The notes beneath the pieces are model-generated. The model saw only the letters and a program-made list of their open reading frames with translations. It was not told where the DNA came from and did not search any database. From positions 62,001 through 126,000 of IMG/VR virus record IMGVR_UViG_3300028829_003504: a stretch of DNA of 64,000 nt. The stretch is one strand, 5' to 3'. The position numbers were made by a program, and so were the translations under genes. This document shows, piece after piece, positions 28,588 to 48,235 of the stretch; the stretch's first letter is position 1; each line of letters begins with the position of its first letter.

Positions 28588-30975
28588 ATGGCTACTACCA
28601 ACTTTGCACCTCTGCTTACAGTGGGTGATGAATACGACTTGTCACCTTTTAGTGGCAGAAACATGGTAATACATGCCCAACGCAATAACACAGGATATAC
28701 GTATACATTCAGCATTGACATACTGACTGGTTTTGATCAAGATCGTTACTACGGTCTTATTGTACCTTCGGGACATGGAGAGATACCTCAATCCAATCCT
28801 AATCAGTTGTTTAAAATCACAGCCGATGCTAAGCTTGTACCTCTTAACTATAGTGATGGTCTTGCAGCACAGATTAGCTACCTTACAGGTGATGATGCAG
28901 GAACTCCAGATATCAATGTACATTGGGGATCAGTAGCCCAGCTTACGGTTATCTCAAGTACTGCAAATGAGGGAACTGAGGCGCTACTTAGAATATACAG
29001 GGATGGTGATACTTCGGGTGCGGTTGATATTAATATTGGTTTTATTCCGGGGACCGCGGACTTAGATGATGTACAGTCTATACCTCCATCTGTTACTATG
29101 CAGTCGGGCTTCTCGTTTGTGGATGTACCTATTACTATTAAGACTGACCTTGATTACGAAGGGGACCAGTCATTTTTATTAAGTGCCCAAATAGCAAATG
29201 CGCCTAATGGGGAGGAATGGACAGGTAGTAACTACAGGCAGTTGGTTATTGTAGATACAACTCCTGAATTTCCTGTAGATGTACCCGGTTGTATGGACGT
29301 TACCGCTAACAACTATAACGATGAGGCTACGATCGACAATGGCAGTTGTACCTATGACCCTGTAGTTGTACCAGGCTGTACTGACCCTCTAGCCAACAAC
29401 TATGATCCACTGGCTACTTCGAACAACGGCAGCTGTACATACGACCCAGTGGTGGTATACGGATGTACTGACCCTTCGGCAAGCAACTATAACCCACTAG
29501 CTACAGATAATGACAATTCCTGTGTCTATCCGCCTCCTGTAGTGGACTGTCTAGTCGTAGGAGACTTACTGGAAGTAGAACATTGGTTTAAAGTTTGGTT
29601 TATAGAGCCTGTTGACGGAGAACAGCTACACGACCAAGATTTAATTCAGTATAAGTGGAGCGGTGACTGGGTAACTGACCCTCGTATAGACCTATTCGAT
29701 TACTCGGAGAAAAATCGTGTAGCGATGTTCAAATTCACCAACACTATGTCTTCATCTGATAGTGACGTAGATGTAGACTACGAGGTAACAGCTTGGGCTA
29801 AAGATTTAAGGTTCATTACGTTAGATGTTACTGACGAAGATAGTGCCAATGTAAGCTTCTCTATGCCTTGTGTTATTGCAGGTAATACCCCAAGCTTTAG
29901 CGTAGGCGACATTACAGTTACGGAACCTAGTAGCGGTACCCTAAAAGCATCTGTTTATATAACGGCAAGCGAAGCCGTAACGGGTGGATCTATTACAATC
30001 GATTACTGTTCGAGTGATATAACCGCTACGTCATCTAGTGCCTCTGTAGATGGAGACAGAGATTACGAGCCTGCCTGCGGTACGGTTACTTTTGAAGTAG
30101 GTGAAAGCTCTAAACAAATAGATGTAACTATAAATACTGATAATCTGTACGAACCTTCCGAGACATTAAAGATGACCATATCTAATGTCAGTCGGGGCAG
30201 TATATCAGACTCGGTAGGTACTATAGAGATACAAGAATGGATTGTTCCTACAGTATCAGTTACTCTGGCGTCACAGGGAGCTACGAAAGAATTGTTTGTG
30301 GGTCGCGATACTTCCGGATCGACGGATGCGGTTGAGGTGACAGTAAACGGAAATGTCGAATCAAGACGTTTCTTGATGGAACAGGTCCTCAAGGACTATG
30401 ACATAGCTATATGTGATGAACCCGTTGAGACTGGTCACGGTAATGACGGATGTTCAGACAATTCTAATCCCCTGTCCCACTATAAAGGTGTTGCGGGTGC
30501 TACTAGTAATTTGACTGTCAACTATATAAATAGCATACAACCTCTTCTTGATTCAGGTACTCAGGAGATTAGTATCCTAGTAATGAATGATAGCTCCGAT
30601 GCAATATCCCATGATAACTCTGTATGGGATAACGAGTGGGCTTGGCTAGGAGCTTTAGGTATCCCTGTTACTCTGACCTTCATACGCGTAATAGGGCAGA
30701 CTCATATAGATAACGGTACAGGTAACTATGAATTGGCTCGCATCTGGTTTGAAGAAATCGTTGCTGCTGCACCAGGTAATGTAACGGCTTACTTTAAATC
30801 CTATAGCTCCTACACAACAGGCGCAGCCAGTGACCTAAATGATATACTAAGCAGTACAGTCAATAATGACTATGCGGCAACATGTAACGCCCGACCCGAT
30901 GACGTTATAATAGTAACAGCACCGGACGAAGACTCAGCCTTATCCTTAGCACAGGGAGCCATAACATGTCCTTAG
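28588..30975 (+). CDS. adhesin-like fibre protein: Calx-beta, 3x Cys repeat, Calx-beta, vWA-like domain
   Basis: Two Calx-beta motifs, GC(T/M)D..A.NY...AT..N.SC.Y repeats and the MIDAS-like DTSGS at 30307. Confidence 0.75.
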   Translation: MATTNFAPLLTVGDEYDLSPFSGRNMVIHAQRNNTGYTYTFSIDILTGFDQDRYYGLIVPSGHGEIPQSNPNQLFKITADAKLVPLNYSDGLAAQISYLTGDDAGTPDINVHWGSVAQLTVISSTANEGTEALLRIYRDGDTSGAVDINIGFIPGTADLDDVQSIPPSVTMQSGFSFVDVPITIKTDLDYEGDQSFLLSAQIANAPNGEEWTGSNYRQLVIVDTTPEFPVDVPGCMDVTANNYNDEATIDNGSCTYDPVVVPGCTDPLANNYDPLATSNNGSCTYDPVVVYGCTDPSASNYNPLATDNDNSCVYPPPVVDCLVVGDLLEVEHWFKVWFIEPVDGEQLHDQDLIQYKWSGDWVTDPRIDLFDYSEKNRVAMFKFTNTMSSSDSDVDVDYEVTAWAKDLRFITLDVTDEDSANVSFSMPCVIAGNTPSFSVGDITVTEPSSGTLKASVYITASEAVTGGSITIDYCSSDITATSSSASVDGDRDYEPACGTVTFEVGESSKQIDVTINTDNLYEPSETLKMTISNVSRGSISDSVGTIEIQEWIVPTVSVTLASQGATKELFVGRDTSGSTDAVEVTVNGNVESRRFLMEQVLKDYDIAICDEPVETGHGNDGCSDNSNPLSHYKGVAGATSNLTVNYINSIQPLLDSGTQEISILVMNDSSDAISHDNSVWDNEWAWLGALGIPVTLTFIRVIGQTHIDNGTGNYELARIWFEEIVAAAPGNVTAYFKSYSSYTTGAASDLNDILSSTVNNDYAATCNARPDDVIIVTAPDEDSALSLAQGAITCP
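29287..29529 (+). repeat. three tandem 29-aa (87-nt period) GCTD..A.NY...AT..N.SC.Y repeats
   Basis: Units start at 29287, 29374 and 29461, each with two Cys. Confidence 0.9.
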
Positions 30976-31846: not shown

Positions 31847-32608
31847 ATGTTAACTAAACCGAAGATTAGTATGATAGCTCCAAGTCAGAACTCTGCTGAT
31901 AATGATGTAGTGAAGACGGCTGGAGGTAAGTTAAAGTCGGAGCAGAATGTAGTACCTATAGGGGACGCCGCAGTTAAGAGTGGCCGATATGATACTACGA
32001 CAGGCACTTTGATGATAACGTTAGGTGATGACAGTACTTTAGTCGTGGAGGGTTTTCCTACTGACCAGAGTATAGGAACTGGCCCTAAAGGTGATAGAGG
32101 TGCTGTAGGAAAAGGAGGCCGTCCTGGCAAGAACGGCAAAGATGGATTAGATGGCCCTCAAGGATGTCCAGGGTCTAAAGGAGATAAAGGTGAAATCGGT
32201 CCTACAGGGCCAGAAGGCCCTATGGGTATAACGGGTGAGCAAGGTATTCAAGGTATTCAGGGCCAGCAAGGTGACAGGGGACCTAAAGGAGAACCTGGGC
32301 AAGAACCTATTTACGTATACAGTGAAGCAGGTAGTGAAGAACGAACAGTACAATATGGCCGTGTCATGCTGTGGGGTCACTATCAGTCGGACGGTAGCGT
32401 TAACACTGCTGATGTTAGGTATCCTCAGGCTACAACTAGACTTACACAAACTGTAGTAGCCTTCTTCGCTAATCCTCAATCCGTTCAAGCTCAAAACTAT
32501 GAGATTGAAGCGCAGACGAAAGAAGGGTTTGCTCTACGCGTACCATCATCATTTGCCTTACCCCTTGATGACGATTGGGACTTCCAATGGATAGCACTAG
32601 GAGATTAA
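31847..32608 (+). CDS. collagen-like tail fibre with C-terminal lectin-like tip domain
   Basis: MLTKP N-terminus, about 24 triplets, and GRVMLWGH...V.YP.A...GF.....F.WIALG typical of fibre tips. Confidence 0.8.
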   Translation: MLTKPKISMIAPSQNSADNDVVKTAGGKLKSEQNVVPIGDAAVKSGRYDTTTGTLMITLGDDSTLVVEGFPTDQSIGTGPKGDRGAVGKGGRPGKNGKDGLDGPQGCPGSKGDKGEIGPTGPEGPMGITGEQGIQGIQGQQGDRGPKGEPGQEPIYVYSEAGSEERTVQYGRVMLWGHYQSDGSVNTADVRYPQATTRLTQTVVAFFANPQSVQAQNYEIEAQTKEGFALRVPSSFALPLDDDWDFQWIALGD

Positions 32609-33127: not shown

Positions 33128-33988
33128 ATGGATGAAAAATTAGTTACATTCGTTGATCGTTGTCTAAGCATTGCTGCTGAAAGAGAATTGGCTTACGACA
33201 AGCCAATTATCATAGTAGTAAAGGCTCCAACGACAGGTGAAACTACTCGCATAGTAATAGCCCATAGTGAACCTCATGGTTTAGTGTTACCTTTAAACGT
33301 TACATGGGTAGTATCGGATTCAGACGACCTCGCATATAAGAAAGTATTCAAGCGTTCTTCAAAATCTACTGAGGTACCTTTTGAAAATACCTGGAGTGAA
33401 CTCACTACGTACGAAGAGGTGTTTACTCCTTTTCAGTACTACGCAGATGAAGATCTTCCAGAAGTAGACTACATTGTAGGTGAAGTAGCAGACCATCTAG
33501 ATAAGACCAGTGACGACGATGTACACGGAAGTACGTCCTATACCAACGGAAGAATTTCCGTCTTACAGGGTTCTTTCGGAGCTGTTTACCAGAATCTGAA
33601 CCAACGTATCGTGTACAATGATCAAAGGATTAGAGAACTGGAGAGTGTAAGCTCTGAAGGTTTATCTGAAACCATATTAGCCCTTGAGTTAGGTGGTTTA
33701 GAAAGAGACGCAATACTAACTGACCTTACTGATCGTATAGTGGATATAGAGAATGGAAGTTCAGGAGGCGGGTCCACTGGATACAACAGCTATACGAAAA
33801 TAGTATCAGATGCGGATACGTCTTGGGTTATAGACCATAACTTTGGCACCAAAGGCCTTATATGTCAAATATATGATGAAGACTTTAATCCTGTACTGCC
33901 TTCAAGTATGCAGGCAATCAGCGATAATCGTTTGATAGTACTATTTGACGTGGACCAAGCAGGTCGGGCTGTTTTAATCAGTACATAG
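33128..33988 (+). CDS. virion structural protein with coiled coil and C-terminal W.I.HN.G domain
   Basis: SWVIDHNFGTKGLICQIYD...V.P....V.F...AGRAVL. Confidence 0.75.
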   Translation: MDEKLVTFVDRCLSIAAERELAYDKPIIIVVKAPTTGETTRIVIAHSEPHGLVLPLNVTWVVSDSDDLAYKKVFKRSSKSTEVPFENTWSELTTYEEVFTPFQYYADEDLPEVDYIVGEVADHLDKTSDDDVHGSTSYTNGRISVLQGSFGAVYQNLNQRIVYNDQRIRELESVSSEGLSETILALELGGLERDAILTDLTDRIVDIENGSSGGGSTGYNSYTKIVSDADTSWVIDHNFGTKGLICQIYDEDFNPVLPSSMQAISDNRLIVLFDVDQAGRAVLIST

Positions 33989-33989
33989 G

Positions 33990-34937
33990 TTGTACATCAT
34001 GATAAGACTCAAGACCCGGATCCTCGTTGCACTTATTTTTATGCTGTTTAGTAAATCAATATGGTCGTCATATACTCTCTTCCATAAAGATGAATTTACA
34101 ATGGCCGTAGTTAGATCCCCTGTCGGTTCTTATTACGGTAATCCATATATAAGATATATTGCCGAACACCTAGATCAAGTAGGTGTCCATGTTATATATA
34201 TCAAACCTACTATCACGAAAACACGCATACCCTCTAACTATCAAATAAACTTGATTGCAGGTAAGATACTAAAAACATCTCCTAAACAAGTACTAGCTAG
34301 TGACTCCCTAATAAAAAGGTTGAAGGAAGCATTGCCCTTTAAATGGCACAGTAGACTAAGACCTTTCTCTTTTGTAGATCTAGGATCGTCATATATTGAG
34401 CAGTATTCCATGAAGTTAAGGAATTTCATAGAATCCTCAAATTTTTCGTATGACCGAATCTATATACTACATGATCAGACCCCTTTCAGCACTGAAAGGG
34501 CTTTGAGCATAAGAGGTAACCTCATAAAAGCTAAATTCCCAATCTCCAAAATAACATTAGTAACCATTAAGAACTTCCATAGTATAGGTGCGGAACTTAG
34601 GAAGATTTCACATAAGCCTCCTTCTATTATAATCAATAGCATCTTTGTTATAAATGACCTGGAGGTTAATAAGTTGAGGTATAGTGATGACGCTAAACAG
34701 TCAATATTAGATAACAACAGAAAGCATTTAGATATAGGTTTCTGGGTAGCCCGTGATAACGAGGCTTTAATCATAGAACCTAACCCGAAAGATTTCTACG
34801 ACTATTTAATTCTAGGTAAAGAGATTTCACCTGTGCGAGTTAATCTTTACGTCAATAAGAAAAGAATGAATAAACTAAAAATGCAACACATGTATATCAA
34901 TGGCATGGGTGATTTAGATGGATTACTAGACAGATGA
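33990..34937 (+). CDS. secreted/periplasmic protein, possibly periplasmic substrate-binding fold
   Basis: N-terminal signal-like segment (RILVALIFMLFSKSIWS). RIYILHDQTPFS and LYVNKKRMNKLKM resemble ABC substrate-binding proteins. Confidence 0.5.
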   Translation: MYIMIRLKTRILVALIFMLFSKSIWSSYTLFHKDEFTMAVVRSPVGSYYGNPYIRYIAEHLDQVGVHVIYIKPTITKTRIPSNYQINLIAGKILKTSPKQVLASDSLIKRLKEALPFKWHSRLRPFSFVDLGSSYIEQYSMKLRNFIESSNFSYDRIYILHDQTPFSTERALSIRGNLIKAKFPISKITLVTIKNFHSIGAELRKISHKPPSIIINSIFVINDLEVNKLRYSDDAKQSILDNNRKHLDIGFWVARDNEALIIEPNPKDFYDYLILGKEISPVRVNLYVNKKRMNKLKMQHMYINGMGDLDGLLDR

Positions 34938-35248
34938 CTACGAGAAAGAAATTTAAACTACTACTCATTCTAGTAATTGCAGTTGTAGGGATAACAACAA
35001 TAAGTCATTTCTCCGTATCAAGTGGAATACAAAAAGAGCGTGAGAAGATTAGAGAGGACATTGTCTGTATATCCGCTATATGCTTAGATACAGGAATAGG
35101 TAATGAATGTTTTACCTTACCTTCGACAATAAGTAAAATATCGATTGTGGAAGATTTGAACGTCTTCGGAGCAAAGAGATTAATTATAGAGCCTGGCGAT
35201 AGTAGCTGCGGTGTAATAAGGAATGGTGGTACTAATGGAGTTCCTTGA
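34934..35248 (+). CDS. small single-pass membrane protein with 4 periplasmic Cys
   Basis: Basic N-terminus followed by LLLILVIAVVGITTI; ATGA overlap. Confidence 0.65.
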   Translation: MTTRKKFKLLLILVIAVVGITTISHFSVSSGIQKEREKIREDIVCISAICLDTGIGNECFTLPSTISKISIVEDLNVFGAKRLIIEPGDSSCGVIRNGGTNGVP

Positions 35249-35783
35249 TTTACTCCTCAACAGCCCTGTAGCCGTGATAGTACTTACAGTAATACTTTGC
35301 TGTTTTACTGCTTATGGTTATTTATCAGTACTTCCGATGATGGAACGTAATGATATGTTGAACAAGAGGAATAAAGAGCTTGAAGACAAGCTCTTAACAC
35401 AAGGCGGAGTAATAACTACGTTACTTCCGCAGTTGGAATCCTTTATAGGTACAGACTTCAAGGACACCTTACGAGGAGTCAGTGATAGTCTATTGCTTCT
35501 TCAGGAGTCAGTTAACCAATTGAAGGCTTCGGCTAGAGATACTAGTAACCTATACAGTAAGTTCGATGCTTTAAAAGATAAGATTGACCGTATAGATTCC
35601 GTTATAAACAAACACCCAAATAACCTTGAGTCTGAAATGGCTGAACTTAAAAGGTCAGTAAGCGATATACATAGTGAGTGCGTCGGGCTATTGAGACGTT
35701 ACGATAGTATCGCAGGGGCGCTTATTCAAAATAACACTGGCCGAATGGACGGTCAGCCGGTGCACTTGGAAGGCCTAAGATGA
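35223..35783 (+). CDS. membrane-anchored coiled-coil protein
   Basis: N-terminal TM (VAVIVLTVILCCFTAYGYL) followed by heptad-rich helices. Confidence 0.7.
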   Translation: MVVLMEFLDLLLNSPVAVIVLTVILCCFTAYGYLSVLPMMERNDMLNKRNKELEDKLLTQGGVITTLLPQLESFIGTDFKDTLRGVSDSLLLLQESVNQLKASARDTSNLYSKFDALKDKIDRIDSVINKHPNNLESEMAELKRSVSDIHSECVGLLRRYDSIAGALIQNNTGRMDGQPVHLEGLR

Positions 35784-36538
35784 TATTCATTAAAAACAAC
35801 ATAAATTTCAGGCAAGTTAGTGCATTGGCGCAATCTAACTTCCTACGAAGTAAAAGTTTCATGCTAAATGAAGTGTTGAAGTCAGAAAAACACGTATTCA
35901 GCAGTACCTCAAAAGAGATACTGCTGCAAACCTACAAGGTGTGGACGGATTTACTCATAGTGACAGAAGACTTCTTCGTAAGTAATAGTAAATCCGTCTG
36001 TGACGCAGAGGCTTTGGATTTTCTCAACTCCGAAGCTAAGAAACGTGTTGAAGTATTACGTAAACATTTCGTGTCTAAACCGGAGTGGTTTGATCAAGAG
36101 TTTATAAACGTATGGCTTGAGATACAGGATTCGCGTAAGGTACAACTTAAGCAAACTCTGTCCCACACGGCATTAAATGAATCAGCTACTTCGGCATATA
36201 ACAGTATGACGTTGCACCTTATATCATTTATGAACCACGTATTATTTACATTACATGAAATAGACTACCTCTTGTACTTCAACGATAGAGAGGATTTTCT
36301 ACCTTTTGTGTACATTGACACGGTAGATGTTAATTTTAATATAGCTACTGGTAATTGCTATTCCTCTACGAGGATTGACATATACCGAGCTTTGAATCTA
36401 CTTAATACGGAAACCATAGAAATTAAAAATGGTTTCCGTAAAGAGCAACTGGAAGATGATAGTAAATTCGCTAAAGCGTATAAAGCTATAACTTCCGAAA
36501 TTGAATCACGTGGCATAACGATAGGTTGTATTACGTAG
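35780..36538 (+). CDS. hypothetical helical protein
   Basis: 252-aa ORF with ATGA overlap. Confidence 0.7.
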   Translation: MIFIKNNINFRQVSALAQSNFLRSKSFMLNEVLKSEKHVFSSTSKEILLQTYKVWTDLLIVTEDFFVSNSKSVCDAEALDFLNSEAKKRVEVLRKHFVSKPEWFDQEFINVWLEIQDSRKVQLKQTLSHTALNESATSAYNSMTLHLISFMNHVLFTLHEIDYLLYFNDREDFLPFVYIDTVDVNFNIATGNCYSSTRIDIYRALNLLNTETIEIKNGFRKEQLEDDSKFAKAYKAITSEIESRGITIGCIT

Positions 36539-36574
36539 ATATTTAAAACTAAACCTTAATTGGAGAATTCTTTT

Positions 36575-38257
36575 ATGAATTTATTAGGTAATTTGGCATT
36601 AACCGGTGGCGGTGTCATCAAGAAGCTTCGCCCAGAAAACTTAGCAGCAGATCCAGTATCTCCTTTAGTGAGCCAAATATGGTTTAATACAGTAGACCTG
36701 GCATTAAAATACTTTGACGGCACTGAGGTACACCAAATCGCCCAAGGTGGTGATTTAGACGAATACTTACGCCGTGACGGTTCCTTACAAATGGGTGCCG
36801 ATTTAGAATTATCAAGTGTAGATCAAACGGCTTCTACGGATTTATCGGCCGTATCTAAAGGTCATTTAAACACGGAGCTTGATAAGAAAGAATTAGTTCT
36901 TACAGGTGCCGCTACTACTATAGCACATGACGATCTAGATGCTGACCTAGCACTTGTCTCTGATGCTGCAGGTAAAGTAAGTGCCTCGGCTACTACTTCC
37001 GCACAAGTAGGCTACTTATCTACTTTGACTTCTGACGTCCAGGTTCAGCTAGATAGTAAAGAAGACGCTCTTGGGTATACTCCGTTAGATAAAGCTGGAG
37101 ATGCAATGTCAGGCCAGTTGGCTATGAATACAAATGCTATTGTAGGCTTACCTGCAGCGGTTGACGCAACTTCACCTGTACGTCTTGCGGAATTTGACGG
37201 CTTTATAGCTGGGTTTAATTGGCAAGAAGATGTCATTGCAATTCAAACCGATGCTTTGACCGATCCAGGAGCCGCTCCTGAGGAAGGCGCTCGTTACGTA
37301 ATCTCAGATGCAGCTAACCTACATGCCAACTTCGGTACTATTGCAGATGTAGAAAACAATGACATCGTAGAGTTCGATGGTACTGACTTCGTAGTAACTT
37401 TTGACGCTAACGTTGTTACTGATCCAGATGGTGCAATGGTTTGGAACACAGGCGCTGCAAACAACTACCGCTTAATCTCAGATGTGTGGACTCCTTTCTA
37501 CGGCCTAGATAATCTAATCGCCGGTACTGGTCTTATTAAATCAGGCCAAACGTTTGATGTGAACTTAGGTGCAGGTATCGGCGAAACACCTTTTGACGAA
37601 GTAGGTATTGACTACGCACCTAATGGTGGTCTTTGGACTCAGGTAGCAGGCGTTGAGTCCACCGACTCTGCGTCTACTTTAGCAATCAAGCTTAATGGTT
37701 CTTCGTTAAAAACTACCGTACTAGGTCTTGAAATCAACGCTGACGGCATCGACGAAACAATGCTAGTTAGTTCTGCTTTAGGTAACGGATTACAAGGCGG
37801 TTCGGGTGTTACTCTTAACGTTAAAGGCGATACGGGTATTACCGTTTCAGAAACTGGTGTTGCTTTCGATGAAACTTATGGCGATGAACGTTACGCTACT
37901 CTATCCGGTGCTACATTCACTGGTATTATTAAAGGTGTTACGCCAGTCGATGATGAAGACTTATCTACTAAAGGTTATATTGACACGGCTGATGCCTTAA
38001 TCAATGAAGCCATTACGGCACTAAGTACTAAAGTAGGAGGTGGTCACTTTGTATATGAAGAAGTTACTACTCCAGCTTCTAGCCACGTTGTAGTTCACAA
38101 TTTTGCCAACAAGTATGTTGACGTTACGGTTGTGGATACTTCGGATGAAGTTATCCTACCTGATAGCATATCTTATACTGATGATAACACTGTGACTGTT
38201 GGCTTCACTAGCCCAATCCTTTGTAGAGTCATTATAACAGGTGCTAACAAGTCGTAG
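36575..38257 (+). CDS. fibre-like virion structural protein
   Basis: Start placed at the ATG after a GGAG RBS. QIWFNT....KYFDG, YLRRDGS..M, LGYTPLDKAGDAMSG, LIAGTGL.K.G and a C-terminal HNF domain. Confidence 0.75.
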   Translation: MNLLGNLALTGGGVIKKLRPENLAADPVSPLVSQIWFNTVDLALKYFDGTEVHQIAQGGDLDEYLRRDGSLQMGADLELSSVDQTASTDLSAVSKGHLNTELDKKELVLTGAATTIAHDDLDADLALVSDAAGKVSASATTSAQVGYLSTLTSDVQVQLDSKEDALGYTPLDKAGDAMSGQLAMNTNAIVGLPAAVDATSPVRLAEFDGFIAGFNWQEDVIAIQTDALTDPGAAPEEGARYVISDAANLHANFGTIADVENNDIVEFDGTDFVVTFDANVVTDPDGAMVWNTGAANNYRLISDVWTPFYGLDNLIAGTGLIKSGQTFDVNLGAGIGETPFDEVGIDYAPNGGLWTQVAGVESTDSASTLAIKLNGSSLKTTVLGLEINADGIDETMLVSSALGNGLQGGSGVTLNVKGDTGITVSETGVAFDETYGDERYATLSGATFTGIIKGVTPVDDEDLSTKGYIDTADALINEAITALSTKVGGGHFVYEEVTTPASSHVVVHNFANKYVDVTVVDTSDEVILPDSISYTDDNTVTVGFTSPILCRVIITGANKS

Positions 38258-38332: not shown

Positions 38333-38932
38333 ATGAAATCTTTCGGTAATATAGATATGCAGAATAATGTACTCAAGAATGTTGTACTTGAAGATTTAGA
38401 CGCATTTCCCGCTAATCCTAAGGTAGGATCTTTTGCTTTAATCCAAAAACGACTAATGGTCTGTTTGGAGTTACAAGACACTGTACCTCTTTGGTTCCCT
38501 CTGGGTTCTGAGATAAGTACCCACACTCATACTCAAAGTGAAGACGAATCAGTGTGGGTTATAAATCATGATCTAGGTAGTTCGACGGTTTTAGTACAAG
38601 CCTATGATGTAAATAACAAAGTCATTATACCTGATGATATTGACCTAAGTCTAAAAGACACTGCGGTAATTACGTTCGCAGTTCCTATACAAGGTCGTGC
38701 CATTATTATGTTAGGTAATATTACAGGTATGGCTAAACCTGAAGTCCGCTTCGAGCAATCATTTACTGTCAATGCTACATGGACGCTTAATCATGGACTT
38801 GGGTATAATCCTATTATCCGTTGTATAAAAGATGGCCTAGAGATACAACCTCAGTCTATCGTACATGATTCCACAACTACCGCTACTATTACTTTCAGTG
38901 AACCTGTTTCAGGTAAAGTAGTGGCTATATAG
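38333..38932 (+). CDS. virion structural protein with two W.I.H.LG domains
   Basis: VWVINHDLGS and TWTLNHGLGY units; N-terminus resembles that of 36575. Confidence 0.75.
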   Translation: MKSFGNIDMQNNVLKNVVLEDLDAFPANPKVGSFALIQKRLMVCLELQDTVPLWFPLGSEISTHTHTQSEDESVWVINHDLGSSTVLVQAYDVNNKVIIPDDIDLSLKDTAVITFAVPIQGRAIIMLGNITGMAKPEVRFEQSFTVNATWTLNHGLGYNPIIRCIKDGLEIQPQSIVHDSTTTATITFSEPVSGKVVAI

Positions 38933-38942
38933 GGAGTACATT

Positions 38943-39158
38943 ATGCTTAAACGATCACAACCTGTCAATTACGTACAAGAGAACCCTTCTACTACTTGGA
39001 TTATTCCACATACGTTAGGTGAAATTGTAGCAGTAGACGTTTTTGTAGACTTAGGTGAAATTGCATTAGAGAAAATACTTGCTCCTACAAAGTTTGAGGA
39101 AAATCAAGTCACTATATCGTTCAGTCAGCCTATGAAAGGTAAAGCTCGCGTAGTGTGA
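38943..39158 (+). CDS. single W.I.H.LG-domain protein
   Basis: TWIIPHTLGE...VTISFSQPMKGKARVV. Confidence 0.75.
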   Translation: MLKRSQPVNYVQENPSTTWIIPHTLGEIVAVDVFVDLGEIALEKILAPTKFEENQVTISFSQPMKGKARVV

Positions 39159-46371: not shown

Positions 46372-46731
46372 ATGACTGAATTAAAAACACCAGTTACCCA
46401 AAAGAAAGCTATTCTAGATAAACTGGATGATACAAAAAGTAGAAGTTGGTTAAAATGGGTTCTAATCATCTTAGTTGCTGTAGGTAGTGCCTTATTTCTG
46501 ATGATGGGAGATAGACGTAGTAGTCAAATGTTAAATCAACGGAAGAAAGAAATCCATACCAGACAAAAAGATGCTAAGATAGACATGGTAGTTAATAGTC
46601 GTGAGGCTATAGATAACCAGGAAGAGAAGATAGAGCAAGTCCGCCAGGAGTATGCAACTAAGACAGAGAAGATTAAAGGTCTTAGTACAGAAAATGAAGT
46701 ATTTACTTCTTGGGAAGATGGAGCCACGTAA
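46372..46731 (+). CDS. i-spanin-like protein (TM plus periplasmic coiled coil)
   Basis: WLKWVLIILVAVGSALFLMM followed by a charged helix; abuts a lipoprotein gene. Confidence 0.6.
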   Translation: MTELKTPVTQKKAILDKLDDTKSRSWLKWVLIILVAVGSALFLMMGDRRSSQMLNQRKKEIHTRQKDAKIDMVVNSREAIDNQEEKIEQVRQEYATKTEKIKGLSTENEVFTSWEDGAT

Positions 46732-47213
46732 TGAAGAAATTATTTTTTACTGCCTTAATCTTGTCAGTCCTTACCGGCTGCATGTCCCCTCCTGAGTTCC
46801 CTGTATCGGACTTACGTATTAGCAATATGCCGAACTTAGAAGGTCAGGTAATAGACGCTATAGCTGTTCCAGATAAACCTAAAGGTGCGCTTGAGAGTAT
46901 CGTATCAGATGATGGGACTCAAGGTAAAGTACTAACATTCAATAGTGCAGAAGTTAAAAGATTATTGGCTATACACAATGCGGCGGAAGGTAATGCCAAA
47001 CTCGTTAAAGAAATGAATAAGCTCCTTTCTATGTATGTGCAGCAAGCTAATATGATTAAAGATTTAGCAGAATTAGAGGAAGCCCGTTCAGCTCGCCTTG
47101 AGTCGGATTTAGCTTACTCTGATTATAAACTTAAAGAGCAGCAGTTGGAAAGCAAAATTGAAACATGGAGCTGGAAGATAGTTGCATTCATAGCACTGGC
47201 CGTAGGATTGTAA
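46731..47213 (+). CDS. spanin-like outer-membrane lipoprotein with hydrophobic C-terminus
   Basis: MKKLFFTALILSVLTG|C lipobox, a coiled coil and the terminal WSWKIVAFIALAVGL. Confidence 0.65.
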   Translation: MKKLFFTALILSVLTGCMSPPEFPVSDLRISNMPNLEGQVIDAIAVPDKPKGALESIVSDDGTQGKVLTFNSAEVKRLLAIHNAAEGNAKLVKEMNKLLSMYVQQANMIKDLAELEEARSARLESDLAYSDYKLKEQQLESKIETWSWKIVAFIALAVGL

Positions 47214-47215
47214 TA

Positions 47216-47554
47216 ATGATTAGAAATTTAAACCGAGAGAACCTGTACGCACGATGTTTCCGTTTTGTTTTTGTTCTAATAGCATTAGGGCTAGTCTACT
47301 TTATATTTAGTACAAGCCCTAATGTGAAGTTCCCGTTAATGTTACATAAGTTGAGTATGGTGACAGTAGCTGCCATCATAGGTTACTTCTTAGATTACAT
47401 ACTTTTCCCGAACTTTAGACCAGGAGATTTGGCTAAAGTCATTGAGGATGAAAAATATCCTACTAGGGGTCTGTATCAGCTTGTAGGTATGTGCAACATA
47501 CGTAGAGCGATTATCATCGTAGGTATGATAATTGGAGTTAGTCAAGGAGTATAG
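47216..47554 (+). CDS. putative 2/3-TM holin (Holin_2-3-like)
   Basis: LHKLSMVTVAAIIGYFLDYILFPNFRP and RRAIIIVG....V..G match this holin family's pattern; lies upstream of the lysin. Confidence 0.75.
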   Translation: MIRNLNRENLYARCFRFVFVLIALGLVYFIFSTSPNVKFPLMLHKLSMVTVAAIIGYFLDYILFPNFRPGDLAKVIEDEKYPTRGLYQLVGMCNIRRAIIIVGMIIGVSQGV

Positions 47555-47560
47555 ATTATT

Positions 47561-48235
47561 ATGATAAAGCCAGCCCTTGTTCTGGCTTTTTCTGTTTTTG
47601 TGGTAGGATGTACTACTGAGAAGCAGAAGAGCCCGACACCCGTAGAAGAAAAGCCTTATACTTTAGTTTGGGTCGAGAGCACCCAGTCTATACCTAGCAA
47701 TGCTAACCAGTATAAGGCTGATATAATTAGACATGCCCAAGCGACTTTTGGGATCAATGCACCTATAAGTATACTGGCCGCACAGATTCATAAAGAGAGT
47801 ACATGGAGAGAGGACGCCAAGAGTCCTTACGCCGAAGGCTTAGCTCAATTTACACCACAGACGGAAGAGCACGTTAAGAACAAATATCCTGTGTTATCGT
47901 ATGGTGATGCACTAAATCCTATATGGTCTATACAGGCTCAGATGCTATACGACAATGAGCTTAAAACTAAAGTAGATGCCATAGACGAGTGTAACGACTG
48001 GGCCTTAACATTTGCAATGTATAACGGAGGTAGTGGTTGGATATGGAAAGAGAAAAATCTAGCAGAAGCTTCCGGGGTAGACAGGAATCAATATTTTGAT
48101 GGAGTTGAGAATTTTAATGGAGGACGTAGATTAAGTGCTAAGAAAGAAAACAGAGACTATCCTAGAAAGATAATACTAGAATTACAGATGATGTACCAAG
48201 AGGGAGGTTGGTCTGGAGTCATAATCTGTGATTAG
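47561..48235 (+). CDS. SLT-family lytic transglycosylase endolysin with lipoprotein-like signal
   Basis: AAQIHKES (catalytic Glu), A.GLAQF.P, YNGG.GW and ENRDYP.KI; N-terminal LAFSVFVVG|C. Confidence 0.85.
   Translation: MIKPALVLAFSVFVVGCTTEKQKSPTPVEEKPYTLVWVESTQSIPSNANQYKADIIRHAQATFGINAPISILAAQIHKESTWREDAKSPYAEGLAQFTPQTEEHVKNKYPVLSYGDALNPIWSIQAQMLYDNELKTKVDAIDECNDWALTFAMYNGGSGWIWKEKNLAEASGVDRNQYFDGVENFNGGRRLSAKKENRDYPRKIILELQMMYQEGGWSGVIICD

What the first reader, a model, noticed from the sequence alone, without database searches (positions are those of the whole stretch)
33990..36538. Four-gene envelope cassette embedded in the fibre region: possible sensing or lysis-control module
Seen: four overlapping genes interrupt a run of acidic structural genes. 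They encode a basic signal-peptide protein with motifs reminiscent of ABC-type periplasmic binding proteins, a small bitopic protein with 4 Cys, a TM coiled-coil protein and a soluble helical protein. None looks like a virion beta-protein. Inference: a late-expressed trans-envelope module that senses periplasmic cues (analogous to T4 RI/T lysis inhibition), mediates superinfection exclusion or anchors assembly at the membrane.
Basis: inference. Interest (0 to 1): 0.6.

Follow-up and report, generated by a model that had tools for sequence, protein, structure and literature searches.

The report
Jumbo-phage envelope module with secreted binding protein
Four translationally coupled genes inside the tail-fibre region of a marine jumbo phage encode a secreted protein with the fold of a bacterial nutrient-binding protein, two single-pass membrane proteins and a cytoplasmic helical protein; the set is conserved in the whole PaBG/Lu11/Y3 phage lineage, looks like a membrane-spanning sensing or guarding device rather than virion parts, and its function is untested.

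Summary
Four overlapping + strand genes (33999-34937, 34934-35248, 35235-35783, 35780-36538) sit between fibre-type structural genes.

- **ORF1:** it has a conserved Sec signal peptide. Its AlphaFold model (pLDDT 87) is a type-I periplasmic-binding-protein fold, nearest to PF04392 amino-acid binders (Z 14-15). No Pfam model hits it, and only 28 relatives exist among 1.84 billion representative proteins.
- **ORF2:** N-in/C-out, with four invariant cysteines in the periplasmic part.
- **ORF3:** a short acidic N-tail, one membrane helix and a roughly 140-residue coiled-coil-like domain that charge bias places in the cytoplasm.
- **ORF4:** soluble, a helical bundle plus a small alpha/beta part (pLDDT 91), with no recognisable fold relative. 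Its PHROG label 'ABC transporter' is unsupported.

The four genes occur in the same order and with the same flanks in all 16 related genomes checked, including PaBG, Lu11, Y3 and NCTB. Vibrio phage SRILMA carries only the ORF3-ORF4 pair. A separate holin, endolysin and spanin-like cassette lies 10 kb downstream.

Best reading (about 0.4): a non-virion complex spanning the inner membrane, with a periplasmic binding-protein input (ORF1-ORF2) and a membrane-tethered cytoplasmic output (ORF3-ORF4). The output is unknown. Control of lysis timing or a response to superinfection is only inferred.

The parts
33999..34937 (+). ORF1, 312 aa (the open frame begins at TTG 33990). A secreted, basic (pI 9.8) protein with a type-I periplasmic-binding-protein fold. 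The signal peptide covers about residues 1-23 (33999-34067).
   Evidence: The signal-like N-terminus is conserved in relatives. The AF2 model has pLDDT 86.9. Foldseek gave more than 393 PDB hits at E<=1e-3; the rows shown are PBP-I-type proteins: solute-binding proteins, LacI-type regulator domains and receptor ligand-binding domains. VIA Z-scores are 14.9, 14.8 and 14.4 to 3lft, 6hni and 3lkv. There is no Pfam hit. Only 28 relatives were found in 1.84e9 proteins.
34934..35248 (+). ORF2, 104 aa. A bitopic membrane protein: K/R-rich N-terminus (cytoplasmic), TM at about residues 9-28, and a roughly 70-aa exported domain with four invariant Cys (C45, C50, C59, C92).
   Evidence: It has no lipobox. 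It is not annotated in Y3 or Lu11 but is present there.
35235..35783 (+). ORF3, 182 aa (186 aa if it starts at ATG 35223). A short acidic N-tail, one TM helix (about residues 6-30 of the short form), a conserved Pro after the TM, a roughly 140-aa coiled-coil-like domain and a conserved C-terminal L-x-G-L-R/K.
   Evidence: Weak hits to many coiled-coil families. phrog_31730 'membrane protein' at 1.7e-7. The flank charges lean towards N-out/C-in.
35780..36538 (+). ORF4, 252 aa. A soluble protein: six long helices plus a small alpha/beta C-terminal part. Invariant residues include the N-terminal N-N-I-x-F-R motif, E46, E63, E160-x-D162, R198 and Y202.
   Evidence: The AF2 model has pLDDT 91. No fold relative was found: Foldseek PDB gave no hit at E<=1e-3, the best VIA-wide Z was 7.3 and Atlas TM was <=0.38. 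There is no Walker A or LSGGQ motif and no TM segment in 31 homologues. phrog_19088 at 8e-37.
33128..33988 (+). Upstream flank: a fibre-type protein that carries a roughly 60-aa C-terminal module shared with the downstream structural genes. The PHROG label 'HNH endonuclease' is doubtful.
   Evidence: It is conserved next to the cassette in all relatives.
36560..38257 (+). Downstream flank: a structural tail protein (phrog_16122) and homologue of PaBG gp257, which was found in virions. The start is probably ATG 36575.

Best explanation
The four genes encode a non-virion protein set that spans the inner membrane. It is a core, vertically inherited feature of PaBG/Lu11/Y3/NCTB-type jumbo myoviruses.

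**Shown:**
- ORF1 is exported and has a two-lobed type-I binding-protein fold nearest to amino-acid-binding PF04392 proteins.
- Its most conserved polar residues (D159, N213, D220, E222, N240, N254 and the YYG loop) sit at the C-terminal edges of the beta-strands of both lobes, where such proteins hold their ligand.
- ORF2 is anchored N-in, with a small four-cysteine domain outside the membrane.
- ORF3 is a single-pass protein with a long helical domain.
- ORF4 is soluble.
- The genes are translationally coupled and always occur together.

**Inferred:**
- ORF1 docks on the disulphide-bonded ectodomain of ORF2.
- ORF2 pairs in the membrane with ORF3.
- ORF3's helical domain faces the cytoplasm and holds ORF4.

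The set would then work as a binding-protein-dependent relay. Occupancy of ORF1 by a periplasmic ligand, either a small molecule or something brought in by another infecting phage, would be passed to a membrane-tethered cytoplasmic unit. ORF3-ORF4 is the older and more portable output pair, since it exists alone in Vibrio phage SRILMA. ORF1-ORF2 is the input added in this lineage.

The output is unknown. My best guess is the timing of lysis or a response to superinfection, by analogy with T4 RI/T/RIII. It is not the lysis machinery itself, not an ABC transporter and not a virion part.
For: - **ORF1 export and fold:** the signal peptide is conserved across family members at 20-68% identity. The PBP-I fold is modelled with high confidence and has whole-length matches. 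An independent language-model search also points to PF04392 (a lead only).
- **Conserved site in ORF1:** the conserved polar residues lie at strand ends of both lobes (alignment against the secondary structure).
- **ORF2:** four invariant Cys and a positive-inside N-flank.
- **ORF3:** the N-tail has 0-1 K/R and 1-3 D/E, while the C-flank has up to 4 K/R.
- **ORF4:** soluble.
- **Coupling:** ATGA overlaps at two junctions.
- **Synteny:** the block is strict in 16 genomes.
- **Vertical inheritance:** divergence is similar to that of the flanking structural genes and GC3 is not deviant, so this is not a recent insertion.
- **Modularity:** ORF1 and ORF2 profiles are absent from Vibrio phage SRILMA, which has ORF3-ORF4 alone.
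- **Lysis functions are elsewhere:** holin, endolysin and a u-spanin-like lipoprotein lie at 46.4-48.2 kb.
- **Not detected in virions:** PaBG gp253-256 are not among the virion bands, while gp257 is.
Against: - No physical interaction is shown. The only complex prediction (ORF3 cytoplasmic part with ORF4) gave no verdict.
- The ORF3 topology rests on a modest charge bias, so the opposite orientation (a periplasmic coiled coil) is possible.
- No ligand, no expression timing and no phenotype are known.
- PBP folds also serve purely as protein-binding scaffolds, for example LpoA-type activators, which appeared as a lower language-model hit.
- The cassette's fixed position between fibre genes could mean a role in fibre or tail assembly.
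- The PaBG virion proteome covered only 14 abundant bands, so absence from it is weak evidence.
Confidence: 0.4

Rival explanations
1. Superinfection exclusion or periplasmic guard without signalling. The exported ORF1-ORF2 pair, with the membrane proteins, blocks the receptor, the DNA-entry route or the tail-tip enzymes of later-arriving phages, or keeps progeny from wasting themselves on debris. Precedents are T4 Imm/Sp, T5 Llp and phi80 Cor.
For: The products are exported and membrane-bound. The cassette lies among the fibre and receptor-binding genes. From my own knowledge, T5 llp and lambdoid cor also sit next to fibre genes. A binding-protein mimic could occupy a host membrane partner.
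Against: Exclusion genes are usually variable accessory genes. This set is a deeply conserved core block across phages of Pseudomonas, Erwinia, Dickeya and marine hosts. The cleft residues of ORF1 are also conserved across those hosts. A cytoplasmic fourth subunit (ORF4) is not needed for a simple block. There are no hits to known exclusion families.
Confidence: 0.2
2. Membrane-anchored assembly aid. ORF3-ORF4 tether or chaperone fibre, tail or baseplate assembly at the inner membrane, and the periplasmic parts only stabilise the anchor.
For: The position is invariant between a fibre-type protein and the gp257-type tail protein in the lineage. Transcription is presumably shared with the structural genes, since no own promoter or terminator is detectable.
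Against: In Vibrio phage SRILMA the ORF3-ORF4 pair lies among small non-structural genes, far from fibre genes. A conserved secreted binding-protein fold with a conserved cleft has no evident use in cytoplasmic assembly.
Confidence: 0.15
3. Part of the lysis machinery itself: ORF3 as an i-spanin or holin-like protein, with ORF2 as its partner.
For: ORF3 has an N-terminal TM plus coiled coil, like Rz. It gives weak PHROG spanin hits at E 0.014-0.05. In Lu11-type genomes the cassette lies one structural gene away from the endolysin block.
Against: ORF2 has no lipobox. The charge bias puts the ORF3 helical domain inside the cell. The window already has a holin (phrog_1528, 2.6e-16), an endolysin (phrog_669, 2e-38) and a lipoprotein with a C-terminal TM (u-spanin-like) at 46.4-48.2 kb.
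Confidence: 0.07
4. Auxiliary metabolic gene: ORF1 is an orphan solute-binding protein that feeds a host ABC importer to boost uptake of, for example, aromatic amino acids, as cyanophage PstS does for phosphate.
For: The nearest structures are amino-acid-binding SBPs; 3lft is bound to L-Trp.
Against: ORF1 is never found without ORF2-ORF4. No permease or ATPase gene is present, and ORF4 is no ATPase. The gene sits in the structural block, so it is presumably made late, when uptake helps little. The same protein would have to fit the importers of very different hosts.
Confidence: 0.05

Closest known systems
PF04392-type (ABC_sub_bind) solute-binding proteins: S. pneumoniae 3LFT (L-Trp complex), C. 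difficile CD0873 (6HNI/6HNJ), V. cholerae 3LKV
   Same: Exported two-lobed type-I binding fold. These are the best structural matches: Z 14.9, 14.8 and 14.4 with 242-245 residues aligned, about 2 Z units above the LacI and sugar-binding proteins.
   Different: Only about 9% identity. The Pfam model does not hit ORF1. There is no transporter next to it. It is encoded by a phage, together with three unrelated partners.
Binding-protein-dependent membrane sensors (LuxP-LuxQ, TorT-TorS, ChvE-VirA; from my own knowledge)
   Same: A periplasmic type-I binding protein reports to a membrane protein rather than to a transporter. This is the working model proposed here.
   Different: Those receivers are histidine kinases. 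ORF2-ORF4 have no kinase or any other recognisable signalling domain. No interaction has been shown.
T4 lysis-inhibition set: holin T, periplasmic antiholin RI, cytoplasmic RIII (PMC8385771, PMC11413866, listed)
   Same: A phage-encoded set made of a secreted periplasmic sensor with a cleavable signal, a single-pass membrane protein and a cytoplasmic helper. From my own knowledge, T4 gene t also lies at the end of the tail-fibre gene block.
   Different: No sequence-family link. The sensor here is a 33-kDa binding-protein fold, not a roughly 10-kDa RI. The holin is a separate gene 10 kb away.
Exclusion proteins encoded beside fibre genes (T5 Llp, phi80/N15 Cor) and T4 Imm/Sp (from my own knowledge)
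   Same: Envelope-located phage proteins, some of them encoded in the fibre region.
   Different: Those are single small proteins that vary between phages. This is a four-gene core block conserved across hosts.
Virus-encoded binding-protein folds: cyanophage PstS (own knowledge); Catovirus and Tupanvirus 'periplasmic binding protein' entries
   Same: Viral genomes carrying a binding-protein fold (ranks 4 and 7).
   Different: PstS is a type-II fold and works with host PstCAB. The giant-virus proteins are much larger and match weakly (TM 0.37-0.38). In BFVD the only phage matches at E<=0.002 are members of this same family.

Membership tests
Type-I periplasmic-binding-protein fold (PBP-like I superfamily) | Two Rossmann-like alpha/beta lobes joined by a hinge, matched over the whole mature chain | tested here: met
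   Model pLDDT 86.9. More than 393 Foldseek hits at E<=1e-3; the listed ones are PBP-I-type proteins. Of 1000 chains, 596 reach Z>=8, and the best is Z 14.9 over 242 residues.
Type-I periplasmic-binding-protein fold (PBP-like I superfamily) | Export signal at the N-terminus | tested here: met
   Hydrophobic N-terminus with K/R in about 21 of 25 members. One lineage has a lipobox instead.
Type-I periplasmic-binding-protein fold (PBP-like I superfamily) | Ligand bound in the inter-lobe cleft | not testable with these tools
   The conserved polar residues lie at strand ends of both lobes, which fits a cleft site.
Pfam PF04392 ABC_sub_bind | Match to the family HMM above the gathering score | tested here: not met
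   No hit at E<=1 for ORF1, at E<=0.1 for any of 25 homologues, or at E<=10 in a six-frame search of the record.
Pfam PF04392 ABC_sub_bind | Genomic partner: ABC permease and ATPase genes | tested here: not met
   The neighbours are ORF2-ORF4 and fibre genes. There is no Walker A or signature motif in the ORF4 family.
ABC transporter (PHROG/RefSeq label on ORF4 homologues) | Nucleotide-binding domain motifs (Walker A, LSGGQ) or a multi-pass permease | tested here: not met
   0 of 31 homologues have either motif, and max KD19 is 0.72-1.61, so there is no TM helix. The fold is a helical bundle with no NBD match. The original Lu11 record says hypothetical protein.
Two-component spanin (Rz/Rz1 type) | Outer-membrane lipoprotein partner with a lipobox, encoded within or next to the i-spanin gene | tested here: not met
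   None of the 9 ORF2 homologues has a lipobox.
Two-component spanin (Rz/Rz1 type) | i-spanin: N-in TM with a periplasmic coiled coil | tested here: inconclusive
   ORF3 has a TM plus a helical domain, but its flank charges lean towards N-out/C-in. PHROG spanin hits reach only E 0.014-0.05.
T4 lysis-inhibition proteins (T, RI, RIII) | Sequence-family membership of any component | tested here: not met
   No Pfam, PHROG or NCBIfam hit to these families. The holin family hit lies elsewhere, at 47165-47554.
Virion structural protein | Detected in purified particles | tested here: inconclusive
   PaBG gp253-256 are absent from the 14 identified virion bands, while gp257 and gp261 are present (PMC7412058 Table 1). 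The method sees only abundant proteins.

The most novel reading that the evidence does not exclude
PaBG/Lu11/Y3-type jumbo phages carry their own binding-protein-dependent transmembrane sensor. A secreted, phage-specific type-I binding protein reads a periplasmic cue, either a host metabolite or material from a superinfecting phage. Through a disulphide-bonded co-receptor and a membrane-tethered cytoplasmic pair, it sets a late decision such as when to lyse. That would be a lysis-inhibition-like or environment-sensing circuit built from parts unrelated to T4's.
Probability: 0.3. Interest if true: 0.8.

Novelty: new variant of a known kind. Interest (0 to 1): 0.55.

Why it matters
Phages are known to sense their surroundings in only a handful of ways, such as T-even lysis inhibition, arbitrium and borrowed quorum-sensing receptors. 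A secreted binding-protein fold that belongs to the core genome of a whole jumbo-phage lineage, and is always wired to three membrane or cytoplasmic partners, would be a new type of phage envelope device.

It is directly testable, because cultured members exist: PaBG on P. aeruginosa PAO1, Lu11 on P. putida, and Y3 and its relatives on Erwinia.

There is also a practical point about annotation. The current public labels on these genes ('ABC transporter', 'HNH endonuclease') look wrong or doubtful. Gene 2 is missing from several annotations, and the signal peptide of gene 1 is cut off in others.

Tried and rejected
- **DNA-level searches:** megablast of the region against phage records found nothing. 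A degenerate-pattern scan of IMG/VR found only an identical twin contig.
- **Family libraries:** Pfam, NCBIfam and PADLOC gave nothing significant for any of the four proteins. ORF3 gave only coiled-coil noise.
- **PDB profile searches:** the ORF1, ORF2 and ORF4 alignments gave nothing usable.
- **ORF4 fold:** searches in PDB (Foldseek and exhaustive VIA-align) and in the ESM Atlas found only generic helical bundles.
- **Complex prediction:** The result for ORF3(40-186) with ORF4 was 'no answer' (ipSAE 0.01), which is no evidence either way. ORF1-ORF2 could not be tested because only one job was allowed.
- **Regulatory and RNA features:** the sigma-70 promoter and terminator scan was at or below the chance level. 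There was no Rfam match and no meaningful repeat.
- **Expression data:** only two DNA runs, from the probable source sample (a marine metagenome), hold the sequence. There is no RNA run, so I laid no reads.
- **Literature:** the Y3 paper is not held. The Dickeya jumbo-phage paper has no proteomics. Searches found no paper on phage-encoded type-I binding proteins.
- **Horizontal acquisition:** I rejected this explanation for the low GC (37%). GC3 is ordinary and the block is ancestral to the lineage.
- **Genetic code:** only table 11 was used, and no sequence was taken for human.
Full report
**Where the window comes from.** The window is part of an 83-kb IMG/VR virus record, estimated at about 32% of a genome. 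An identical stretch lies on a 262-kb contig. The only sequencing runs that hold it are marine metagenome DNA from the probable source sample. Protein-level matches place it in the jumbo myovirus group of Pseudomonas phages PaBG and Lu11, phage NCTB, Erwinia phage Y3 and Dickeya phage AD1. The PaBG paper treats this group as one clade (PMC7412058).

**Checking the observation.** The four + strand ORFs are there.
- The junctions are ATGA overlaps at ORF1/ORF2 and ORF3/ORF4, and a 14-26 nt overlap at ORF2/ORF3.
- ORF1 should start at ATG 33999. Relatives P0002 and P0003 begin with the same MIR... and keep a hydrophobic N-terminus, while the internal Met38 chosen by one gene caller (P0001, 278 aa) is Leu in them.
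- ORF3 probably starts at ATG 35235, which has AAGGA 12 nt upstream and matches the relatives' starts.
- ORF1 has pI 9.8 and ORF2 pI 8.4. Most neighbours have pI 4.0-4.8, although two small upstream genes are basic.
- Opposite-strand ORFs are short and lie inside conserved genes.
- There is no Rfam hit, no meaningful repeat, and no promoter or terminator signal above chance.

**ORF1.**
- An exhaustive phmmer search of 1.84 billion representatives found only 28 relatives, nearly all of 290-330 aa.
- About 21 of 25 aligned members have a signal-like N-terminus. One lineage (P0033) has a lipobox instead.
- No Pfam family hits ORF1 or any aligned homologue, and the PF04392 model finds nothing in the record even at E 10.
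- The AlphaFold2 model built on this alignment is confident (pLDDT 86.9, pTM 0.81).
- Foldseek against the PDB gives more than 393 matches at E<=1e-3. The listed ones are type-I binding-protein folds: solute-binding proteins, LacI-type regulator domains and receptor ligand-binding domains.
- On re-alignment, three PF04392-type solute-binding proteins lead: 3lft (an L-Trp complex) at Z 14.9, 6hni (CD0873) at Z 14.8 and 3lkv at Z 14.4. Each aligns over 242-245 residues, about two Z units above the LacI and sugar-binding proteins.
- A language-model feature search also ranks PF04392 clusters first, at score 0.85, which is only a lead.
- The invariant or nearly invariant polar residues (D159, N213, D220, E222, N240, N254, plus the YYG loop after strand 1) all lie at the C-terminal ends of beta-strands in both lobes. 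That is where this fold binds ligands. It is an inference, because I could not inspect the model coordinates.
- In BFVD the only phage proteins with this fold are members of the same family. The other viral hits are weak matches to giant-virus proteins.

**ORF2.** Every homologue examined has a K/R-rich N-flank with almost no acidic residues, one TM helix, and four invariant cysteines with spacing C-x4-C-x8-9-C-x~32-C in the C-terminal part. This fits an N-in/C-out anchor with a doubly disulphide-bonded periplasmic domain. There is no lipobox and no match to any solved structure. The gene is not annotated in Y3 or Lu11, but it is present in both.

**ORF3.** It has a short N-tail with 0-1 basic and 1-3 acidic residues, one TM helix, a conserved proline just after the helix, a roughly 140-residue helical domain that gives only weak hits to many coiled-coil families, and a conserved C-terminal L-x-G-L-R/K. 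By the positive-inside rule it leans towards N-out/C-in, with the helical domain in the cytoplasm. The bias is modest.

**ORF4.**
- A profile search gathered 32 homologues, mostly from contigs of 200-316 kb.
- The model is very confident (pLDDT 91) and shows six long helices plus a small alpha/beta part.
- None of the fold searches gave a meaningful match. Foldseek PDB gave no hit at E<=1e-3. The exhaustive VIA-align search reached Z 7.3, within the background for helical proteins. The Atlas search gave TM <=0.38.
- No homologue has a Walker A or LSGGQ motif, or a TM segment.
- The 'ABC transporter' label of phrog_19088, copied into RefSeq records, is therefore unsupported. The original Lu11 record calls the gene hypothetical.

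**Conservation as a unit.**
- The four genes, in the same order, lie between the same fibre-type protein and the same roughly 560-aa tail protein in every lineage member examined, 16 genomes in all: the window, L005-L007, L019-L022, L024-L027, Y3, NCTB, PaBG (gp253-256) and Lu11. These include the most distant ORF1 relatives, at about 20% identity.
- Identity to three relatives falls in step with the flanking structural genes, and GC3 is ordinary. The block is therefore ancestral, and the low GC (37%) reflects amino-acid composition.
- Vibrio phage SRILMA has only an overlapping ORF3-like and ORF4-like pair, set among small soluble proteins. The ORF1 and ORF2 profiles find nothing in it. Five other Vibrio phage records also matched ORF4 but were not examined further.
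- ORF3-ORF4 is therefore a separable pair and ORF1-ORF2 a lineage-specific addition.

**What the cassette is not.**
- The window has its own lysis block at 46.4-48.2 kb. It holds a holin (phrog_1528, 2.6e-16), an endolysin with a lipobox (phrog_669, 2e-38), and a lipoprotein with a C-terminal TM helix that looks like a unimolecular spanin. The cassette is not needed to supply those functions.
- PaBG gp257 and gp261 are in the virion, but gp253-256 are not among the 14 identified bands. This is weak evidence, because only abundant bands were analysed.
- An exported binding protein and an exported cysteine-rich domain cannot join particles that assemble in the cytoplasm. This is inference.

**Mechanism.**
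- I read the set as a complex spanning the inner membrane, with a periplasmic input (ORF1 on ORF2) and a membrane-tethered cytoplasmic output (ORF3 with ORF4), acting as a binding-protein-dependent relay.
- The interactions are inferred from gene coupling, co-occurrence and topology, not shown. The single complex prediction allowed gave no verdict.
- The output is unknown. Lysis timing or a response to superinfection is suggested only by the architectural parallel with T4 RI/T/RIII and by the late-operon setting.
- The rivals are a plain exclusion or guard function, a membrane anchor for tail or fibre assembly, direct lysis components, and a nutrient-uptake helper. I rank them at 0.2, 0.15, 0.07 and 0.05.

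**Verdict.**
Two of its own refutation tests were passed clearly, and the third (plain virion parts) was only weakly addressed. Its functional guesses remain open.
- The feature is real and conserved, and I found no description of it in the searched literature.
- It combines a known fold with three partners of unknown kind in a new setting. I rate it a new variant of a known kind, with interest 0.55.

Noticed in passing
window 46372-48235 (+): This is the phage's lysis block, at the 3' end of the late gene block. It holds a 119-aa TM plus charged-helix protein (46372-46731) and a lipoprotein with lipobox LTGC and a C-terminal TM helix that looks like a unimolecular spanin (about 46731-47213, phrog_23384). 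It also holds a holin (47165-47554, phrog_1528) and an endolysin/transglycosylase with its own lipobox VVGC (47561-48235, phrog_669).
   Followed up: partly
window 33791-33985, 38045-38254, 38513-38710, 38735-38929, 38967-39155 (+): A roughly 60-aa module (W.I.H.LG ... D ... I.P.SI ... T.TI.F..P..GRA) recurs five times in the four genes that flank the cassette. The flanks are therefore one paralogous fibre-type family, and the PHROG label 'HNH endonuclease' on 33128-33988 is doubtful.
   Followed up: partly
L001 (Erwinia phage Y3), L010/L023 (Lu11), P0001: There are public annotation gaps. The ORF2 homologue is not called in Y3 or Lu11. Y3 gp101 and the IMG gene call for the window's twin start after the signal peptide. 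In Y3 the longer open frame with a signal-like N-terminus overlaps gp102 by about 130 nt.
   Followed up: partly
L011 (Salmonella phage Sen-NF, 108 kb) and L012 (Alcaligenes phage Afa-NA1, 78 kb): These two records are filed under unrelated hosts but share identical proteins in this region. In Sen-NF the ORF1 homologue is truncated to 193 aa with no signal. In Afa-NA1, ORF1-ORF3 are missing and the upstream reading frame runs into a 5'-truncated ORF4. This is either a natural deletion or an assembly problem.
   Followed up: no
window 28588-30975 and 31847-32608 (+): The 795-aa protein has three tandem roughly 29-aa repeats, each with a cysteine pair (VPGC.D..A.NY...AT..N.SC.Y.P), and its relatives carry Calx-beta. 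The 253-aa protein has collagen-like G-x-y repeats, and its relatives hit PF01391.
   Followed up: no
L019-L022 and L010 (Lu11-type genomes): In Lu11-type phages ORF1 is shorter (about 253-267 aa). The cassette is separated from the endolysin block by a single structural gene plus four small genes, because fewer fibre genes lie in between.
   Followed up: partly
window, about 9.7 kb and 48.2 kb: Gene orientation switches at these two points, from - to + and from + to -, and the GC skew changes sign there. The two points bound the long + strand structural and lysis block that contains the cassette.
   Followed up: no
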